In this document: piece by piece, positions 1,499-28,194 of the stretch
Layout: every line of letters begins with the position of its first letter
Position numbering within the stretch: the first letter of the stretch is position 1
IMG/VR virus record: IMGVR_UViG_3300046513_000348
Location: 1 to 64,000 of that record
Direction: 5' to 3' (one strand)
Length of the DNA: 64,000 nt
Notes under the pieces: generated by a model
What the model was told of the DNA's origin: nothing
Databases searched by the model: none
The model's input: the letters and a program-made list of their open reading frames with translations, nothing else
Position numbers and translations under genes: made by a program

Positions 1499-2758
1499 TT
1501 AGAAGCTTGGAGCGTTGCCGAGCTGGTACGCTTTCAACATATCGGTGATCGAAGCGCCTTCCTTCTGGTTGGCGGCACGGCATTCGCGGATCGACAGATC
1601 CGAAGCGGTCGGGATGTCGGTCGTGTAGAACTTCACGCGGTCGTATTCCGGATCGATGACGGCCACGATGAACAGGCCGGTTTCGTCGAACAGCTTCTGG
1701 CGAACACGGAAGTCGTCGAACTTGCCGCCGATTTCCAGTTCCACCTTCTTGATGGTTTCGACCGTCGTCACCACCAGGTTGGTCGAATTGGCCACCGAAG
1801 GATTCAGCGACAGCATGGCCGAGATCTTGTTGTTACGACGCTGGGAAGCCACCGCCGTGTAGATGCCGGTGTTGTCGCGCATCAGGTTCTTCTTGTGCTG
1901 CTTCACCAGATCGCGAGCCGTCAGCAGGTCGACCAGATTGATCTGACCCGAGCGATACTTGATCCAGCGATTGGCGACGCTGTTGTCGACGTTGCCGGTC
2001 GAGAGCAGTTCCTTCAGCAGGTTCGGGACCATGACCGATGCGTTCAGGCGAATCATGATCGGGATGGTGCGCGACTTGTTGTCGTTCGAGATTTGCACCT
2101 CGAGGATCTTGCCCACGGACAGGTTCGACGCTTCCTTGATGACTTCCAGGGAACGCGATGCGAGACCGCCCGGTTCCATCAGGTTCTTTTCGTTCTTGTC
2201 GGCAGTGATTGCGCGCTGGATGTCGTTCTTCATGCCCTTGGCAGCATCCTGCACTGCACCTTGAACGATCTTTCCGGTACGCTTCTCGGCTTCGTCCATG
2301 ACCGCGTCGAGAACGCCACGGGTAGGGATCTTATTGACGGCACGGCCATTGCTGATGGCGCCGTTCGATTCGAGCGAAGGCATGCCGCCGAACTTCGGCA
2401 GTTTGTGCGCATAACCTTCGTTGGACATCATCCAGATGGCGCCGGCGGAGTCGAGCGCACTGTCGCGAACCGAGCGGTTCGGGTTCAGTTTGTCGAGATG
2501 GCGCGCAACGGCGATGTTGTCGATCGACGCTTGCAGCATATTCCAGGCCAGCAGATAGTATGCCGAAAAAGCCGAATGCAGGGACTGTGTCACTACCGGC
2601 GTATGTTCGTAGAAGATTACGCTGGAGTCAACGATGAGCGTTGGCTCTACCCGGGTGGGGCGTGTGTAATCGACGTACGAGTTGGCGGCGCCAGATCGCA
2701 GACCATCGATTACCTTGCCGGCCGTAACCAGGCCGGCTTCTCCAATTTTGTCAAGCAT
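1499..2758 (-). CDS. Internal head/inner-body protein (phiKZ gp89-like)
   Basis: 419 aa; S-x-E sites (SNE, SLE) of the type cut by the phiKZ-family prohead protease; divergent from the baseplate pair as in phiKZ. Confidence 0.6.
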   Translation of the reverse strand: MLDKIGEAGLVTAGKVIDGLRSGAANSYVDYTRPTRVEPTLIVDSSVIFYEHTPVVTQSLHSAFSAYYLLAWNMLQASIDNIAVARHLDKLNPNRSVRDSALDSAGAIWMMSNEGYAHKLPKFGGMPSLESNGAISNGRAVNKIPTRGVLDAVMDEAEKRTGKIVQGAVQDAAKGMKNDIQRAITADKNEKNLMEPGGLASRSLEVIKEASNLSVGKILEVQISNDNKSRTIPIMIRLNASVMVPNLLKELLSTGNVDNSVANRWIKYRSGQINLVDLLTARDLVKQHKKNLMRDNTGIYTAVASQRRNNKISAMLSLNPSVANSTNLVVTTVETIKKVELEIGGKFDDFRVRQKLFDETGLFIVAVIDPEYDRVKFYTTDIPTASDLSIRECRAANQKEGASITDMLKAYQLGNAPSF

Positions 2759-2790
2759 GATTTTTACCTCGGGATAACAGGACTTTAAAA

Positions 2791-4086
2791 GTGGATAACA
2801 GATTAGATCTAACCATTGACCAGATCTATAAACTCGGCAAGAAGGGTTCTGAAGACCTTCAAGCGGGACTCGAACGTGTGTACAACTCCACGCCCTTGGG
2901 TCCCTTGCCGAGTAACATAGTAAATACCGTCTATGGTATCAACCATCGTCAAACTCAATTGGCTTTGCCGTTTAACCGTGATGGTTTCGGCTTGACCTTT
3001 TTTACGCGGCCTCGCATGAACTTGACCACGAACAATATTCGTTTTGTGCGTCAGATGTACCCATTACTGAATACTGAGCCGCGTTCGATCCAGCGTATCA
3101 TTCGTACTACTCTCGATCCGCTGATTGCCTATGGGTCCGACCCAAGAAACAAAGAAATCAAATCGCCCTATGTGGACGACTTGAACATGTTTATTCCACT
3201 GCTGACGAACCTCTGTCTGACCATCTCAGGATGGCCTGATTTCGTCGTCGATACTCGCACAACGCCCGAGGGTCATTACCGAGAAGCGCACAGCATGGTC
3301 GACAGCAGTGTTGAAATTAAGAACACATACGAATTGTCGGCGTCCTTCCGGAACATACCGAATAATCCGGTCACATTATTGTTTTATTTCTGGTTGTTCT
3401 ACATGTCGAAGGTTTTCGAAGGGGAACTCATCCCTTACGGCTCTTCGCTGTACGAATGCGAGATGGATTACAATACCCGGATCTACCGTCTGATCCTCGA
3501 TCCGTCGAAGCGATACGTTCAACACATCCTGTCCACTGGTGCAGCATTCCCGCTTAATGCCCCGGTGGGCGCCCTGGGTAACTTTGACAGCACCCAGCCC
3601 TTCAACGATGCAAACGACAACGTGAACATTCGTTTCCAATGCATCGGCATGGATTACAACGATCCAATTCAGATCACGGAATTCAACCAAGCAGTGGCTA
3701 TCATGAACCCTGCCATGGCCGACGACGTTCGTGATGATTATCTCATCCAAATTCCTTACCAGGTCCTGTCGTTCTTCAATATGCGTGGTTATCCACGTAT
3801 CGACCCTTCGTCGATGGAACTGCAGTGGTATATCTCGTACTCCGTGTTCAAGTCGTATGCCACTCAACTGGCGGAAGTCTCGAACCTGAACGGTATGCGT
3901 AACCTGGCGTTCCTCGACTATATTTCTCCAGGGCAGCAGCAGGATTATAGGAAGAGCCTGGCTGACATGGAAGGTGTTCCCATGAACTCGAAGGATGGTG
4001 GCTTGATCACTACGCCTTTGACGGGAGAATACAGCCAGGAACAAATTGAACAGGTAAGGGCTTACTTCACAGGTGGTGGAAAATAA
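2791..4086 (+). CDS. Virion baseplate/tail-tube-like structural protein (phiKZ gp88-like)
   Basis: 431 aa, GTG start; FFTRPRMNL motif; coupled (TAATG) to the next large structural gene. Confidence 0.55.
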   Translation: MDNRLDLTIDQIYKLGKKGSEDLQAGLERVYNSTPLGPLPSNIVNTVYGINHRQTQLALPFNRDGFGLTFFTRPRMNLTTNNIRFVRQMYPLLNTEPRSIQRIIRTTLDPLIAYGSDPRNKEIKSPYVDDLNMFIPLLTNLCLTISGWPDFVVDTRTTPEGHYREAHSMVDSSVEIKNTYELSASFRNIPNNPVTLLFYFWLFYMSKVFEGELIPYGSSLYECEMDYNTRIYRLILDPSKRYVQHILSTGAAFPLNAPVGALGNFDSTQPFNDANDNVNIRFQCIGMDYNDPIQITEFNQAVAIMNPAMADDVRDDYLIQIPYQVLSFFNMRGYPRIDPSSMELQWYISYSVFKSYATQLAEVSNLNGMRNLAFLDYISPGQQQDYRKSLADMEGVPMNSKDGGLITTPLTGEYSQEQIEQVRAYFTGGGK

Positions 4087-6989
4087 TGGCCGGAAACATT
4101 CGTGACCTCATGAACGATGCCCAAGCGGCTTCGTTCGACCCTAGCGCGACGTATCGAGCGTCGCTGCGTACTCTCTTGCAAGTGATGGGCGGGCAGTTGG
4201 ATAACCTCTCCCCGATCAATCCTGTCGTGTACGCCATCGAAAACCAAGCTGCCTTGATTGGCGGCTTTACTGAAACGATGCAATCGGAAACACGTCGTCT
4301 TCTGCAAGTGCAGGCACTGACGCCCGAGGATTTGTATCCGCATATGGCGGACATCCACTTCAGCAACATCTTCAACCTGCCATCGACAACCGTTTTCACT
4401 CTCGTTCTGAACAAGGCCGAGATCCTGAACAAGATGGTGCCCGTACCAGGTACGATGTCCCGCAAGGTAACCATTCCTCGCAACTCGTACTTCACGATCT
4501 CTGATTACGTCTTCGGTATCCACTATCCGATCGACATCATCGAGCAGGTTCACGGCGCCCTCCGTGTGGCTTACGATACCGACGTCACGACTCCTCTTCA
4601 GGATCTCCAGACGAACGTGCTGAAGTTCCGCACGGTGCAGCGTGATGACATCGAATACCTGGCCATCGACATCCCGGTGTTCCAGTTCGCCATCACGAGC
4701 AAAACGCCGACGGTTACCCAAGCGATGACGTTTAGCTACAACATCGCCCTGCCTGATCTGTACTACGCCACCCGCGTTTATCGCACGAAGAGCGACGGTA
4801 CGCAGGAAGAGATCAAGGTGACCTACAGCGAAGAGATCTATGACCCTCTGAAGGCCACTGCGGTGGTGCGTATTCTGGATGGTCAGGTGAACATCATGAT
4901 TCCGCAGATCTACATCAACAGCGGCTTGATCGCTGGAGAACTGCGTATCGATGTCTACTCAACCAAGGGACCAGTCTCCACGACTTTCGACAGCTACCCG
5001 ATTGGTTCGATCGGCTATCGCTTCCGTGACCTGAACAAACGCGCCGACGCGACGTTCTCGGCTCCAATGCAAAAGTTGGGTACCTGCACGATTCTGGGCG
5101 AGAAGCCTGTGACTGGTGGTGTCCTGGGCATGACCTTCGAAGAGCTGCGTGATGCGGTTATCTCCGATGGCATCGGAGATCCTAACCTGCCGATTACTCC
5201 GGCACAGGTGAAGAACTACCTGAACCGTCGTGGTTACGACATTATCAAGAACACCGACATCGTCACCGACCGCGTGTTCCTGGCCACTCGCAACATGCCT
5301 GAGCCAGCCGGTGCAGGTCTTCTGACGGCAGCCAACGCATCCATTGAAACGATGAATGCGGCCTTTACAGACCTCATCACCAACTCGGCGGTAATCGACA
5401 ACGGAACGAGCGTTACGATCACGCCACGGGCCGTATATCGCCTTGACGACGGTATCCTGAAGCTTATGTCGGACAGTGAGCTCGCTACCGTGCGCTCGAT
5501 GCGTTCGGATCTGCTGGCGGCCCACGTCACGACCAACAGTTATCTGTACTCGCCGTACTACAACGTTCTGGACAAAGCGAACAACCAGTTCCGCTTGGCG
5601 GCCTACTACCTGGATGATCCGGCAGTGGAAAGCCAAACGTTCGTTCAGGACAACGAAGGTACTTTGCTGTCGGTGAATACCAACGGCTACCTCTTGACCA
5701 AGACCGACTCGGGTTACAAGCTGACGCTGAAGACCAAGTCGAGCGACGAGTACAAGGAGCTGAACGATAGCATGGTGCAATGCCTGCTGGGTTTCATCTC
5801 GCCGACTGAAGACGATCCGTGCTGGGTGGTTGGTACCCAGATCGCCGTAGGTTCGGATAAGGAGCGTACGTTCGAGTTTATTCTCGACTCCCGCTTCTCG
5901 ATGAATGCCAGCGATCGTATCGACTTCCGCAACTTCAAGATGTACGACACGACGGACAAGACGATCTATTCGGATCTCGAGCAGGACTTCATGGTCGTGT
6001 ACACCACGACCGAGCAAATGGGTAACCTGTTCCAACCGGGTACGATCGACGCTAAGCTGCCGCGTTACCTGATCCCGATGAATTCCGTCGGCATCACGGA
6101 AGAAAAGCTGAGCCTGCGTTTCGGTTCTGCTCTGTCGAACCTCTGGGCACGCGCGCGTTCGATCGCCTCATCGATTCTGTACGAGACCCATGCGACCGAC
6201 GTGATACTGCGTTACACGAAAGATGTCTTCAAGACCAATCCGGAAACGGGCGGCGACATCTGGTTCGTGGACGGCAAACCGCAGCGCATCTTGCTGCATG
6301 CCAAAGACGATCCTTATCTGGACCCGGAGAACAACCCGATCGTTCAGTATCCGAAAGGCACCGTCGTACTCGATCCCGTGACCGGCGAACCCAAGGTCAA
6401 GGATGCCCGTTACCTGAAGCATCGTTTCGAACTGTTCCTGATTGAAGGCGTATACATCTTCAGTAATGACCAGATCGCAATCGACTATCGTAACTCGGTC
6501 GCCAAGACCGTGGCTGCATGGGTGACTGAAGAAGTCTCGGGTCTCGAGAAAGTCACGATGGACAAGAGCAAAGCTTACTTCTATCCGAAGACCGTGTTCG
6601 GTACGGTGGAAGTCATTGTCACCGATGGTATTGTCCAGCAGATTCCTGCCGGTCAGAGCTTCGATGTCAAACTGTACGTCCCTGCTGAAGTGATGCAGAA
6701 CGACGAACTGAAAGCCCAACTCAAGAAACAAACCATTGCGGTTATTTCGGAATACCTGAAGAACCGCACACTGGCCGTCAGCGACATCATCGAACTCCTG
6801 AAACAAGCCTACGGGAGCGACGTGATCGACGTACAGGTCAGTCAGTTTGGCCCTGCTGCTAACATCCCTGTGATGCAGTTGGTCAATGAGGTTCACCGCT
6901 GTGGTATCCGTAAGCGTCTGGTTTCCCGTGATGACGAGAAGCTGGTCGTGGAAGAAGCCATTACCGTGTCCTACCAGTCGATTCAGTAA
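4086..6989 (+). CDS. Large baseplate wedge-like structural protein (phiKZ gp87-like)
   Basis: 967 aa, beta-rich; size and synteny fit the large conserved virion protein of phiKZ-like phages. Confidence 0.6.
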   Translation: MAGNIRDLMNDAQAASFDPSATYRASLRTLLQVMGGQLDNLSPINPVVYAIENQAALIGGFTETMQSETRRLLQVQALTPEDLYPHMADIHFSNIFNLPSTTVFTLVLNKAEILNKMVPVPGTMSRKVTIPRNSYFTISDYVFGIHYPIDIIEQVHGALRVAYDTDVTTPLQDLQTNVLKFRTVQRDDIEYLAIDIPVFQFAITSKTPTVTQAMTFSYNIALPDLYYATRVYRTKSDGTQEEIKVTYSEEIYDPLKATAVVRILDGQVNIMIPQIYINSGLIAGELRIDVYSTKGPVSTTFDSYPIGSIGYRFRDLNKRADATFSAPMQKLGTCTILGEKPVTGGVLGMTFEELRDAVISDGIGDPNLPITPAQVKNYLNRRGYDIIKNTDIVTDRVFLATRNMPEPAGAGLLTAANASIETMNAAFTDLITNSAVIDNGTSVTITPRAVYRLDDGILKLMSDSELATVRSMRSDLLAAHVTTNSYLYSPYYNVLDKANNQFRLAAYYLDDPAVESQTFVQDNEGTLLSVNTNGYLLTKTDSGYKLTLKTKSSDEYKELNDSMVQCLLGFISPTEDDPCWVVGTQIAVGSDKERTFEFILDSRFSMNASDRIDFRNFKMYDTTDKTIYSDLEQDFMVVYTTTEQMGNLFQPGTIDAKLPRYLIPMNSVGITEEKLSLRFGSALSNLWARARSIASSILYETHATDVILRYTKDVFKTNPETGGDIWFVDGKPQRILLHAKDDPYLDPENNPIVQYPKGTVVLDPVTGEPKVKDARYLKHRFELFLIEGVYIFSNDQIAIDYRNSVAKTVAAWVTEEVSGLEKVTMDKSKAYFYPKTVFGTVEVIVTDGIVQQIPAGQSFDVKLYVPAEVMQNDELKAQLKKQTIAVISEYLKNRTLAVSDIIELLKQAYGSDVIDVQVSQFGPAANIPVMQLVNEVHRCGIRKRLVSRDDEKLVVEEAITVSYQSIQ

Positions 6990-19535: not shown

Positions 19536-19565
19536 ATACTACCAGCCCGTGAGGGCTGGTAGTAT
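19536..19565 (-). terminator. Hairpin terminator
   Basis: 13-bp perfect stem, GTGA/TCAC loop. Confidence 0.7.
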
Positions 19566-20113
19566 TAGCTTTTTGTTGATGCGTTTGGCTGTGACCTCAG
19601 GAGATCCTCAAGCTTCTTCAATTCCCTGCCAGCACCGCCTAGCGTTTTCGCGCTATGCTTCTTAGCAGATTGAATTACCTTAAGGAAGTCTCGTCGAGGA
19701 AACTGGATTAGCTGATCGAACGGAATGCCGAAGATTTCGAAGACTCGATTTTCAGCGAATTGATCGAGTCTGAAATCCAGCGGGTCCACTTCCGCAAGAG
19801 ACTCTTTGGGCGACAGGTAGAGAAGAGGCCAGGGCACATCTGGATTTTCCGGACCGTGATGGTCGTAGATCCCGAACGCTGTTTCGTAGTGCATCCTCAT
19901 GATGAGGTCTGCCTCCACGACATTCGGGAACTTCAACTTGGTCATCGCCTGCAACACAACGTTTGCAGGCGAATTGTTTCTGTCCTCTGCCCTGGCTAGC
20001 TCCGGCTCTAGTCCGACGTGTCCTCCAAGCTCCGCGACGTGATCCCATGCAACTTCTGCTCGACCAGCTGAAAAAAAACCGAAATCGAGTCGATGGGAAT
20101 CAGACGCGGCCAC
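19565..20113 (-). CDS. Tail/baseplate assembly chaperone C-terminal part (T4 gp51 / lambda T-like); start uncertain, possibly reached by -1 frameshift
   Basis: VFEIFGIPFDQLIQFPRRDF motif; frame open across the U8 site of the upstream gene; ATG 19945 lacks a clear RBS. Confidence 0.5.
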   Translation of the reverse strand: MAASDSHRLDFGFFSAGRAEVAWDHVAELGGHVGLEPELARAEDRNNSPANVVLQAMTKLKFPNVVEADLIMRMHYETAFGIYDHHGPENPDVPWPLLYLSPKESLAEVDPLDFRLDQFAENRVFEIFGIPFDQLIQFPRRDFLKVIQSAKKHSAKTLGGAGRELKKLEDLLRSQPNASTKS

Positions 20114-21525
20114 TTGTCACCCGACTTCGTGTCTTCGTATTCGTTGACCGAGGTCGTGGCGATGAGTGCCACTTGCGTCTTGTTGATGTAGTCCGAGACT
20201 GCCTTGAAGAACTTCTTGGAGATCTCGTCCGAGGTCGACAGGGAGGTCAGCACCTTGTCCACGTTTTCACGGGTGGTGTAGAGCTCGCCGTCTTCCTCGA
20301 TGGCCTTGATGTAGTGCGAGTACTGGCGCAGACGGGATGCCAGCGCCAGCTGGCTGATGTAGGCCAGACGTTTGCGTTCGTCTGCATCGGCGCCGAGAGC
20401 AGCGTGGACGGCTGCCTGGATCTCGTTAATCCACTTCTCGCCGGAGTCGAACCATTCGCGCAGGCTCGGCGTATGCAGGTGCAACTTAACGCCTTCGCCG
20501 ATATCGACCACGGTGTTCTGGTTGAACACGAAGCCATCGCGGTAGTCCTTGACGGTCTTCAGGGTCATCGGCTGTTCGATGCGCTTCACCATGTGCGACA
20601 GCTGAGCGTCGTTGAACATGTTCGCGTCCATGAACAGCGACTTGCGCACGTCGATCAGCTGTTTGACTTCGCCCTTCGGCAGCTTGGTATCTTCGGTGAA
20701 GACCGAGCGCTTCAGTGGGAAACCATTCGGATAGACGGCCGTTGCCACCGAGTGGGCGATCAGCGGCATGTCGTTGATGGTGATGTGGTCCGACAGGTTT
20801 TCGATCGGCAGATCCGACACGGTGGTCTCGACCAGCGAACCGACCCAGTGCTGATAGATCGCACGAGCCGTGAACACCTGGTTGTTCGAGAACAGCAGGC
20901 CGTGGGTCTTGCGACCGAGCTTGACGGTTTCAGCCAGCACTTCACGCCACATCGAGATGATCTCGTCTTCACCCAGTGGCTTGACCGTGGCGTAGAAGCC
21001 CGATGCCATCAGGGGAACCTGCACCGGCGAACCCAGGCCGAGCTTGGCACGGATCGACAGCTGCAGACGTTCGGAGCTCATCTTGGCGCCGCGGCCCTTG
21101 TTGGTGAACTTGGGGCGACCGATGTTGATGTTGCTGCCGGCGAACGACAGGGTGTTACGCCAGGATGCGTTTGGGTTGGCCAGTGCATCTTCGAAAATGC
21201 CGTGAGCCGGATGCGAAACGAAACCGCTCAGCAGGTTCTGATACCAGCTGACCGAATCTTCGCTGATGTCGACTTCACCGATCTTGGAGGATTCCAGATC
21301 GGCATTGACGGCATCGGCGGTGTCCGGCAGAACCGGGACCATGATGTCCTGGAACTTGTCGGCCTGCTCGTCGGTCATGTCGGTGACGACTGGCGCCTTG
21401 ATTTCGTAGTTCTTGTCTTGCTTGGGGACGACTGCGGACTGCGGGTCCACCGAAAGAGGGGTATCTTCCGGCAGACTCAGGTCCACGTCATCGCCGTTCG
21501 GATGATCTTCAGGAGCGACGGACAT
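20008..21525 (-). CDS. Conserved phiKZ-like protein, probable tail/baseplate assembly chaperone (T4 gp26 / lambda G-like)
   Basis: 505 aa, acidic N-terminus, AAGGA RBS; function inferred from pairing with the downstream ORF. Confidence 0.5.
   Translation of the reverse strand: MSVAPEDHPNGDDVDLSLPEDTPLSVDPQSAVVPKQDKNYEIKAPVVTDMTDEQADKFQDIMVPVLPDTADAVNADLESSKIGEVDISEDSVSWYQNLLSGFVSHPAHGIFEDALANPNASWRNTLSFAGSNINIGRPKFTNKGRGAKMSSERLQLSIRAKLGLGSPVQVPLMASGFYATVKPLGEDEIISMWREVLAETVKLGRKTHGLLFSNNQVFTARAIYQHWVGSLVETTVSDLPIENLSDHITINDMPLIAHSVATAVYPNGFPLKRSVFTEDTKLPKGEVKQLIDVRKSLFMDANMFNDAQLSHMVKRIEQPMTLKTVKDYRDGFVFNQNTVVDIGEGVKLHLHTPSLREWFDSGEKWINEIQAAVHAALGADADERKRLAYISQLALASRLRQYSHYIKAIEEDGELYTTRENVDKVLTSLSTSDEISKKFFKAVSDYINKTQVALIATTSVNEYEDTKSGDKWPRLIPIDSISVFFQLVEQKLHGITSRSLEDTSD
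20071..20078 (-). promoter_or_regulatory. Candidate -1 slippery site (U8)
   Basis: GTT TTT TTT CAG in the 0 frame; the -1 frame is open to 19565. Confidence 0.5.
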
Positions 21526-28155: not shown

Positions 28156-28194
28156 AAAAAAAATGGTGGGAATGTTTTCTAGGCATTCCCACCA
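28156..28194 (-). terminator. Terminator-like hairpin with U8 abutting the tRNA 5' end
   Basis: 11-bp stem TGGTGGGAATG / CATTCCCACCA followed by T8. Confidence 0.6.

What the first reader, a model, noticed from the sequence alone, without database searches (positions are those of the whole stretch)
19565..20113. Candidate programmed -1 frameshift joining a tail-assembly-chaperone-like gene pair
Seen: 20 codons before its stop, the 505-aa gene reads GTT TTT TTT CAG (U8, 20078-20071), while its nearby Phe-Phe pair uses TTC TTC. The -1 frame is open from just upstream of this run to 19565, and its first downstream ATG (19945) has no clear RBS. A slip would give a 653-aa fusion (485+168). Known: lambda G/GT-type chaperones use such frameshifts, and T4 gp26/gp51 are a comparable pair. 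I am not aware of this being described for phiKZ-like phages.
Basis: partly seen in the sequence, partly recalled or inferred. Interest (0 to 1): 0.7.

Follow-up and report, generated by a model that had tools for sequence, protein, structure and literature searches.

The report
Conserved -1 frameshift in phiKZ-like phages
A run of eight T's near the end of a 505-codon phage gene very probably makes some ribosomes slip back one base and add a 168-residue tail, and the same layout is kept in all 40 phiKZ-like giant phages examined, where the two parts are annotated as separate genes.

Summary
The window comes from a Chiangmaivirus-like (RSL2/RSF1-like) phiKZ-type jumbo phage.

The 505-aa gene is the homologue of phiKZ gp77 / PhiPA3 gp074. 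The small ORF is the homologue of PhiPA3 gp073 and phiKZ 076.4.

All 40 distinct related loci examined, down to about 20% protein identity, share three features:
- A T5-T8 run sits on the same conserved Phe-Phe.
- The downstream ORF is in the -1 frame.
- That frame is open from the run for 151-186 codons.

One locus (RTH11) is one base off, at the run itself.

Further support:
- The big gene uses TTC for all 17 other Phe codons.
- Synonymous variation is lowest in the whole gene at the run.
- The stretch between the 0-frame stop and ATG 19945 evolves like coding sequence in the -1 frame.
- That ATG is not conserved.
- Four lineages, phiKZ among them, have no start codon before the conserved motif of the small domain.

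The best reading is a programmed -1 shift giving 505-aa and 653-aa products. It is probably ribosomal; slippage by the phage RNA polymerase is not excluded.

The lambda G/GT-type chaperone label holds only as an analogy. The big protein resembles T4 gp26-like baseplate-hub assembly proteins weakly, by fold only.

I found no published description. I rate it a new member of a known kind.

The parts
20008..21525 (-). Zero-frame gene, 505 aa. It is the homologue of phiKZ gp77, PhiPA3 gp074 and 201phi2-1 gp136 (phrog_4585). Its function has not been shown; its fold weakly resembles T4 gp26-like baseplate-hub assembly proteins.
20071..20078 (-). The T8 run. The slippery heptamer T_TTT_TTT is 20077-20071, on codons F484 and F485. 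These are the only TTT codons of the gene.
   Evidence: invariant in 6 relatives at about 74% nucleotide identity; a T5-T8 run sits at the same Phe-Phe in 40 of 40 loci
20008..20070 (-). Overlap zone read in two frames. The 0 frame reads QLVEQKLHGITSRSLEDTSD then stop. The -1 frame reads SAGRAEVAWDHVAELGGHVGL.
   Evidence: This zone has the lowest synonymous variation of the whole gene: 0.15 against a gene mean of 0.43. All three -1-frame codon positions are equally constrained: 0.25/0.17/0.19.
19568..20071 (-). The 168 codons read in the -1 frame after the slip, which form the C-terminal extension of the 653-aa product. The stop is at 19565-19567.
19946..20007 (-). The 'intergenic' linker between the 0-frame stop and ATG 19945. 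It evolves as coding sequence in the -1 frame.
   Evidence: Variability at codon positions 1/2/3 is 0.38/0.29/0.60, like the domain at 0.28/0.21/0.58. The window has no start codon upstream of it.
19943..19945 (-). The ATG used by gene callers for a 126-aa product. It has no Shine-Dalgarno sequence and is not conserved: it is absent in L025, L027, L028, L030 and L033.
19945..19972 (-). A 10-bp hairpin whose 3' arm ends on the A of ATG 19945. It is specific to the window.
   Evidence: -21.3 kcal/mol for the 71 nt folded, z -1.9
19568..19888 (-). Conserved helical domain of the extension (phrog_12109; PhiPA3 gp073 family). It runs from the near-invariant Tyr of Y-E-T-A-F-G-I-Y-D-H to the end.
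19536..19565 (-). Terminator-like hairpin with 13 pairs and a T-rich tail. It starts at the stop codon of the -1 ORF, which marks the end of the transcription unit.

Best explanation
The 505-codon gene and the small ORF downstream form one recoded gene.

Most ribosomes read the 0 frame and stop at 20008, giving a 505-aa protein. A fraction slips back one base on U_UUU_UUU (20077-20071). In that slip the two tRNA-Phe re-pair perfectly. Those ribosomes then read UCA and go on in the -1 frame to 19565. The result is a 653-aa protein that has the first 485 residues in common and carries a 168-residue extension. The first 40 or so residues of the extension are poorly predicted; the rest is a small helical domain with a long C-terminal helix and a basic tail.

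What is shown: the sequence layout, its conservation across the phiKZ-like phages, and the signs of dual coding.

What is inferred: that the slip happens on the ribosome, how efficient it is, and that both products are needed. The last rests on the absence of any in-frame fusion among known homologues.

The function is also inferred, and weakly. The protein may be a T4 gp26-like factor of baseplate-hub or tail assembly made in two forms at a fixed ratio, by analogy with lambda G/GT.
For: 1. Slippery heptamer. It is in the right phase, and the run is the only place where the gene uses TTT for Phe (0 TTT and 17 TTC elsewhere). The same holds in FLC8, RSL2, SURPRISE13 and L032.

2. Conservation over 40 distinct loci. 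These are 27 deposited phages from about 18 lineages, 9 metagenome contigs, 3 IMG/VR contigs and the window.
- Each has a T5-T8 run on the same conserved Phe-Phe.
- Among the deposited phage records, 26 of 27 annotate the small gene in the -1 frame, although the gaps range from -136 to +218 nt.
- The -1 frame is open from the run for 151-186 codons. This holds even in AT-rich phiKZ, where the chance of staying open over the whole stretch is about 2e-6 (the figure includes the small ORF itself).

3. Synonymous variation. In 14 clade sequences the 12 lowest 15-codon windows all lie at residues 476-502. The minimum is 0.150 at residues 480-494, against a gene mean of 0.434.

4. The linker upstream of ATG 19945 shows a coding pattern in the -1 frame. 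A motif H[VI]-x4-FG in it is kept in distant lineages, upstream of their annotated starts.

5. Start codons.
- ATG 19945 is not conserved and has no Shine-Dalgarno sequence.
- phiKZ, Ea35-70, AH06 and ChrisDB have no ATG, GTG or TTG at all between the run and the near-invariant Tyr of the small domain.
- No gene was called there in L025.

6. No in-frame fusion. Among 72 HMMER hits in 1.84 billion representative proteins, every credible homologue of the small domain is a stand-alone ORF of 71-171 aa. The one longer hit (370 aa, 7 short stretches, E 7e-4) looks spurious. This fits a need for both forms.

7. The run is genuine DNA: it is the same T8 in contigs from other samples.

8. phiKZ-type RNA-seq contigs run unbroken from gp77 through the extension ORF. 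In two of four runs they end near its stop. In the window a terminator hairpin follows the -1 stop directly.
Against: - There is no direct evidence of the fused protein.
- No conserved or unusually stable downstream RNA structure was found. Z-scores ran from -2.0 to +1.8. The small hairpin 8 nt after the run in the clade has a mismatch in the window.
- No consistent upstream Shine-Dalgarno-like stimulator was seen.
- A few lineages have weaker sites: G_UUU_UUU, G_UUU_UUC, the T5 of pVa-21 (A_CUU_UUU_A) and the GTT TTT TCT of L030. These allow only a P-site slip or an imperfect re-pairing.
- Most lineages do have some ATG a few codons before the conserved Tyr, so a free small protein could also be made.
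- RTH11 departs by one base.
- The Phe-Phe is itself conserved in the protein. The position of the run alone therefore does not prove that a slip site is selected; the codon choice does.
Confidence: 0.68

Rival explanations
1. Transcriptional slippage. The phage's own multisubunit RNA polymerase adds one U in the U-run in a share of transcripts. Ordinary translation of those mRNAs then gives the same 653-aa protein.
For: - The product would be identical, so all the comparative evidence for a fused reading fits equally well.
- Thirty of 40 loci have T7 or T8, which is longer than the T6 needed to code Phe-Phe. T8 is one base more than the heptamer needs.
- pEa54 keeps T7 although the protein there reads Phe-Leu.
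- RTH11 differs from the usual layout by exactly one T in the run.
- From general knowledge, phiKZ-like phages transcribe with their own polymerases. The slippage behaviour of these enzymes is unknown to me.
Against: - Ten loci have only T5 or T6. From general knowledge that is short for polymerase slippage; bacterial enzymes usually need about 9.
- phiKZ-type RNA-seq contigs from four studies carry the genomic T7 with no indel. Contigs cannot show a minority form, though.
- The run is always placed so that a UUU codon can re-pair in the -1 frame, which polymerase slippage would not require. The conserved Phe-Phe forces that phase anyway.
Confidence: 0.2
2. Two ordinary genes. The small ORF is translated only from its own start (ATG 19945 or a nearby codon). 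The T-run and the open -1 frame are by-products of a conserved Phe-Phe and of GC-rich sequence.
For: - All 27 deposited phage records examined annotate two separate genes, none joined.
- Most lineages have some ATG within 2-27 codons before the conserved Tyr.
- No fusion protein has been reported in the papers I could search.
Against: - TTT is used only at the run in a gene that otherwise uses TTC.
- The frame relation holds across gaps of -136 to +218 nt.
- The -1 frame is open in AT-rich phiKZ, L028 and L029.
- The linker evolves as coding sequence but has no conserved start.
- Four lineages have no start codon before the conserved motif.
- The synonymous-site minimum of the gene lies exactly at the run.
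Confidence: 0.08
3. Artefact or decay. The T8 is a sequencing error, or the gene is broken. The true gene would be a single in-frame ORF or a pseudogene.
For: Homopolymers are error-prone. RTH11 shows a one-base discrepancy at this very run.
Against: - The same run length is present in independent metagenome contigs.
- The same two-frame layout, with a conserved 0-frame tail and stop, is present in 40 loci from many laboratories and sequencing platforms.
- Both frames are under purifying selection.
Confidence: 0.02

Closest known systems
Lambda G/GT and the conserved -1 frameshift of tail assembly chaperone genes in tailed phages (e.g. P2 E/E+E'); from general knowledge (Xu, Hendrix and Duda 2004)
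   Same: A -1 slip on a slippery heptamer near the 3' end of a morphogenesis-type gene. It yields a short form and a C-terminally extended form that share the N-terminal part, at a fixed ratio. It is conserved by position rather than by sequence. Annotators usually see two overlapping or adjacent ORFs.
   Different: - There is no sequence or profile match to any tail assembly chaperone family.
- The upstream protein has 505-660 aa, not about 140.
- The gene is not next to tube or tape-measure genes; it is next to a virion RNA polymerase beta-like gene.
- The slippery site is U_UUU_UUN, whereas lambda's is G_GGA_AAG (from general knowledge).
T4 gp26 (baseplate hub assembly protein, Pfam PF12322 T4_baseplate), with its internal product gp26'
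   Same: - The AlphaFold model of the 505-aa protein matches predicted structures named baseplate hub subunit or hub assembly protein (E 6e-6 to 1e-3, TM by target 0.45-0.57).
- Language-model features and an ESM Atlas cluster also point to PF12322.
- T4 gp26 ends in CPECG...FFELL, which aligns with the CxxC...FFTL end of the phiKZ-type proteins.
- T4 gene 26 also gives two products, through an internal start (record annotation).
   Different: - PF12322 does not match the window protein, eight homologues scanned with it (RSL2, RSF1, phiKZ, PhiPA3, FLC9, RP31, pEa54, PCH45), or the whole records of phiKZ, SPN3US, Goslar, AH06 and PCH45.
- The hhalign probability is only 1.6%.
- T4 gp26 has 208 aa, codes the Phe-Phe as TTC TTT and stops three codons later without an extension.
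- The window protein lacks the CxxC.
E. coli dnaX (tau/gamma) -1 frameshift, and IS-element transposase frameshifts; from general knowledge
   Same: Bacterial-type -1 tandem slippage on a homopolymeric heptamer (A_AAA_AAG in dnaX), giving two products from one gene.
   Different: Those sites have defined stimulators: an upstream Shine-Dalgarno-like element and a downstream hairpin. Neither was found conserved here. In dnaX the shifted product is the shorter one.

Membership tests
Programmed -1 ribosomal frameshift site | Slippery heptamer X_XXY_YYZ in phase with the 0 frame | tested here: met
   The window has T_TTT_TTT at 20077-20071. A canonical U_UUU_UUN is present in about 32 of 40 loci. 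The site is weaker in PhiPA3, FLC9, L036, L037, Noxifer, pVa-21 and L030, and one base out of phase in RTH11.
Programmed -1 ribosomal frameshift site | The -1 ORF is open from the site and extends beyond the 0-frame stop | tested here: met
   In the window the -1 frame is open from 20116 to 19565. All 40 loci have 151-186 codons open after the run.
Programmed -1 ribosomal frameshift site | The site and the frame relation are conserved in relatives, with suppressed synonymous change in the overlap | tested here: met
Programmed -1 ribosomal frameshift site | A stimulatory element: downstream hairpin or pseudoknot, or upstream Shine-Dalgarno-like sequence | tested here: inconclusive
   No conserved or unusually stable fold was found in the 80 nt after the run in 33 loci (z from -2.0 to +1.8). 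Pseudoknots were not searched.
Programmed -1 ribosomal frameshift site | The trans-frame protein is made | not testable with these tools
   This needs mass spectrometry, a tagged protein or ribosome profiling.
Lambda G/GT-type tail assembly chaperone pair | Sequence or profile membership in a tail assembly chaperone family | tested here: not met
   Pfam and NCBIfam give no match. The PHROG families found are of unknown function.
Lambda G/GT-type tail assembly chaperone pair | Position between the tail tube gene and the tape-measure gene | tested here: not met
   The neighbours are phiKZ gp78-like and gp79-like genes, an RNA polymerase beta-like gene and unknowns. The same synteny holds in the relatives.
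Lambda G/GT-type tail assembly chaperone pair | Two products sharing an N-terminal part through a -1 shift near the 3' end | tested here: inconclusive
   The layout is present and conserved. The products have not been observed.
T4 gp26 / Pfam PF12322 T4_baseplate | Match to the family model above its cut-off | tested here: not met
   no match at E up to 1-10
T4 gp26 / Pfam PF12322 T4_baseplate | Shared fold | tested here: inconclusive
   Foldseek against BFVD gives E 6e-6 to 1e-3 with TM by target 0.45-0.57. The ESM Atlas gives TM 0.48. Nothing was found in the PDB or Swiss-Prot models. The model has pLDDT 71.6.
Transcriptional slippage recoding site | Run length varies in RNA but not in DNA | tested here: inconclusive
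   phiKZ-type RNA-seq contigs keep T7, but contigs hide minority forms. No raw RNA reads were available.

The most novel reading that the evidence does not exclude
Two readings would be new, and the evidence excludes neither.

(a) The recoding is done by the phage's own RNA polymerase inside the phage nucleus, by insertion of a U. That would be the first programmed transcriptional slippage known for these polymerases.

(b) The gp26-like hub assembly proteins of contractile-tail phages are the counterparts of the G/GT chaperones, and phiKZ-like phages have kept the two-form logic that T4 lost. That would name the missing frameshifted chaperone of this family.
Probability: 0.2. Interest if true: 0.8.

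Novelty: new member of a known kind. Interest (0 to 1): 0.64.

Why it matters
phiKZ-like (Chimalliviridae) phages are heavily studied for their nucleus-like compartment and as therapy candidates.

If the shift is real:
- One gene conserved in every lineage examined is mis-annotated in every deposited genome examined. A 150-190-residue C-terminal extension is listed as a separate small gene, truncated to varying degrees. In phiKZ only 80 of about 165 extension codons are annotated.
- Knock-outs, transposon maps, proteomics searches and structure predictions that treat the two ORFs as independent would be misread.
- It would be the first recoding event I can find for this family. It would also give a handle on an otherwise uncharacterised protein that may act in baseplate or tail assembly.
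- The site is a natural test case for what the host ribosome, or the phage polymerase, does on a plain U-run with no obvious stimulator.

Tried and rejected
Function of the two proteins:
- Pfam, NCBIfam and PDB sequence searches of both proteins gave nothing useful.
- Foldseek of the 505-aa model against the PDB and Swiss-Prot models gave only noise, with proteasome hits at TM below 0.15. VIA-align wide searches of both models gave only short helical matches with Z up to 6.2.
- The extension model matches only its own orthologues.
- hhalign of the extension family against T4 gp51 gave no relation.
- The PF12322 model searched in whole phage records gave no hit.

More loci:
- The search for related loci with the diverse alignment failed because no stretch was conserved enough. 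With the window protein it returned only RSF1.

A natural fusion:
- The search for an in-frame fusion of the two parts found none.

Stimulatory RNA structure:
- No convincing structure was found.

RNA evidence for slippage:
- No RNA run holds the window's phage. The runs labelled metatranscriptomic are probably DNA and hold about 10% of the sampled words.
- phiKZ RNA-seq runs are stored as contigs only, so minority transcripts cannot be seen.

Literature:
- Searches for a prior description returned nothing relevant. The 'gp77' mentions I found refer to other phages' numbering.

Full report
**1. What is in the window**

On the minus strand a 505-codon gene runs from 21525 to 20008. Its end reads TCG GTT TTT TTT CAG. 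The T8 occupies 20078-20071 and codes F484-F485, and 20 codons follow before TAG. The -1 frame is open from 20116/20113 down to a stop at 19567-19565.

A tandem slip on T_TTT_TTT (20077-20071) would continue with UCA. It would give a protein of 485 + 168 = 653 residues with the junction ..DSISVFF|SAGR...

The first ATG of the -1 frame is at 19945. It has no GGAG, GAGG or AGGA in the 18 bases before it. It is the last base of a 10-bp hairpin. A terminator-like hairpin of 13 pairs with a T-rich tail starts at the stop of the -1 ORF.

**2. Is the run more than chance?**

T8 runs are not rare in this window: 9 matches against 2.7 expected. The other six sites are terminator tails or intergenic, and this is the only one inside a long gene.

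The gene codes its other 17 Phe residues with TTC and never with TTT. The nearby Phe-Phe pair is TTC TTC.

The run is genuine. Contigs from two other metagenomes cover it with no indel.

**3. What phage and what genes**

The region is about 74% identical in DNA to Ralstonia and Burkholderia jumbo phages of the genus Chiangmaivirus (RSL2, RSF1, FLC8 and others). The window's record is a 218,660-bp virus genome.

The 505-aa protein belongs to phrog_4585. It is the homologue of phiKZ gp77, PhiPA3 gp074 and 201phi2-1 gp136.

The small ORF belongs to phrog_12109, with PhiPA3 gp073.

The neighbours are the gp78-like and gp79-like genes and an RNA polymerase beta-like gene. This synteny is kept in distant relatives.

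**4. Comparative test of the frameshift**

I collected 40 distinct loci:
- the window;
- 27 deposited phages from about 18 lineages: Chiangmaivirus, phiKZ, PhiPA3, FLC9, RP31, RTH11, pEa54, Eowyn, Ea35-70/AH06/RAY, PCH45, 2050HW/FBKp24, SPN3US/ChrisDB, Goslar, pVa-21, Yong MS32, Noxifer, JM-2012 and phiKT1019/PDCC-1;
- 9 metagenome contigs at 30-70% protein identity (L029 at 30%, the others 54-70%);
- 3 IMG/VR contigs, one probably 201phi2-1 by its contig length.

In all of them a T5-T8 run (T8 in 14, T7 in 16, T6 in 8, T5 in 2) lies on the same conserved Phe-Phe of the motif (L)IP(I/L)D..S.FF(T/Q)L. This is the best-conserved part of the C-terminus.

Among the deposited phage records, 26 of 27 annotate the small gene in the -1 frame, although the distance between the two genes ranges from -136 to +218 nt. 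In all 40 loci the -1 frame is open from at or just before the run for 151-186 codons. For phiKZ (36% GC) the chance of that over the whole stretch is about 2e-6 from base composition.

The one exception is RTH11. It has T7 where one more T would restore the usual layout. The usual 0-frame tail (FFTLLGQ..stop) and the extension are both present, each one frame off. This is most simply a homopolymer miscall or a mutation at the run.

**5. Signs that both frames are translated**

In the six closest relatives the run and the 35 bases after it are invariant, against a background of 74% identity.

In 14 clade sequences the fraction of synonymous differences per codon averages 0.434. The 12 lowest 15-codon windows of the whole gene all lie at residues 476-502, with the minimum (0.150) at 480-494.

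Mean pairwise variability at -1-frame codon positions 1/2/3:

| Stretch | Pos 1 | Pos 2 | Pos 3 | Reading |
|---|---|---|---|---|
| Overlap (run to 0-frame stop) | 0.25 | 0.17 | 0.19 | dual constraint |
| 'Intergenic' linker (0-frame stop to ATG 19945) | 0.38 | 0.29 | 0.60 | coding pattern |
| Conserved domain | 0.28 | 0.21 | 0.58 | coding pattern |

The -1 translation aligns over all 33 loci then in hand. It includes a linker motif H[VI]-x4-FG in distant lineages, upstream of their annotated starts.

**6. Independent initiation is unlikely to be the whole story**

- ATG 19945 is missing in five clade members, and no start codon precedes the linker in the window.
- phiKZ, Ea35-70, AH06 and ChrisDB have no ATG, GTG or TTG at all between the run and the near-invariant Tyr of the small domain. 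The annotated phiKZ 076.4 starts 14 codons after that Tyr.
- Annotators chose very different starts. RAY gp266 is drawn overlapping gp267 by 136 nt.
- No gene was called there in L025.

A free small protein from an internal ATG cannot be excluded in most lineages.

**7. No natural fusion**

HMMER with the 182-aa -1 ORF against 1.84 billion representative proteins found 72 relatives. All are 71-171 aa long, apart from one 370-aa hit that looks spurious. None is fused in frame to a gp77-like protein. This fits a need for both the short and the long form.

**8. Ribosome or polymerase?**

Both routes give the same protein.

For the ribosome:
- The heptamer is canonical in most lineages.
- Ten loci have only T5-T6, which is short for polymerase slippage.
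- RNA-seq contigs of phiKZ-type phage from four studies keep T7.

For the polymerase:
- Runs are often longer than coding or the heptamer needs.
- pEa54 keeps T7 with a Phe-Leu.
- RTH11 is one base off.
- Contigs cannot reveal minority transcripts.

I found no conserved stimulatory RNA structure.

I put a recoding event of either kind at about 0.88, with the ribosome as the agent at about 0.68 and the polymerase at about 0.2.

**9. Function**

No family model matches either protein.

An AlphaFold model of the 505-aa protein (pLDDT 71.6, pTM 0.74) matches its phiKZ-type orthologues. Below them it matches predicted structures named baseplate hub subunit or hub assembly protein of T4-like phages (E 6e-6 to 1e-3, TM by target 0.45-0.57). 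ESM Atlas features and shapes point the same way. Two deposited records call the gene 'baseplate protein' or 'baseplate hub'.

Against T4 gp26 only the C-terminal CPxCG...FFxLL stretch aligns, and weakly. T4 codes that Phe-Phe as TTC TTT and stops three codons later. PF12322 itself does not match. The gp26 link is therefore a lead, not a membership.

The extension is predicted as a poorly modelled linker (residues 1-36 of the ORF) followed by a helical domain with a long last helix (pLDDT 77). It has no informative structural match and no relation to T4 gp51.

**10. Novelty**

I found no paper that describes this frameshift, and no examined record annotates a joined CDS. The mechanism is a familiar one, so I class it as a new member of a known kind. 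It would be relevant for the whole phiKZ-like family.

Noticed in passing
L022 (Xanthomonas phage RTH11) 3550-3556: The deposited genome has T7 where T8 would give the usual layout. As deposited, the 627-aa 'big' ORF reads on in a frame that loses the conserved FFTLLGQ tail. This is probably a homopolymer miscall, or a real one-base variant, exactly at the slip site.
   Followed up: partly
window 19945-19972 (- strand RNA): A 10-bp hairpin ends on the A of ATG 19945. It would bury that start and any ribosome-binding site. It is not obviously conserved in FLC8 or RSL2.
   Followed up: partly
window 19536-19565: A strong two-way terminator-like hairpin (13-14 pairs) lies directly after the stop of the -1 ORF. 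In phiKZ-type RNA-seq, contigs of two runs end within about 10 nt of the matching stop (L034, about 3553-3569).
   Followed up: partly
window 17839, 27195, 28156, 30412, 35210, 51612 (- strand): Six other T8/T9 runs, all on the minus strand. Most follow GC-rich hairpins and look like terminator tails. The run at 28156 is followed by a tRNA-like sequence (GCGGGGATAGCTTAGTGG...).
   Followed up: partly
L038 (T4) 4803-4880: T4 gp26 ends CPECGKTHAHVIRGLKEFFELL, which resembles the CxxC...FFTL end of phiKZ-type gp77 proteins. Gene 25 starts in the -1 frame on the stop of gene 26 (TAATG). There is no T-run (TTC TTT).
   Followed up: partly
L006 (phiKZ) 2736-3239; L041 (RAY) 2517-3065; L014 (Ea35-70) 3128: Annotated starts of the small ORF are inconsistent between genomes. 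phiKZ 076.4 covers only the last 80 codons. RAY gp266 is drawn overlapping gp267 by 136 nt. The annotated start in Ea35-70 is not ATG, GTG or TTG.
   Followed up: partly
L030 2957-2965: One metagenome contig reads GTT TTT TCT (Phe-Ser) instead of GTT TTT TTT. It is either a real weaker site or an assembly error in the run.
   Followed up: no
BFVD hits A0A1B4XWT4 and A0A1B4XWS3 (Tenacibaculum phage pT24): A phage outside the phiKZ-like group has weak structural matches to both the big protein (E 2e-4) and the small domain (E 1.8, probability 0.75). The pair may therefore be older than the phiKZ-like family.
   Followed up: no
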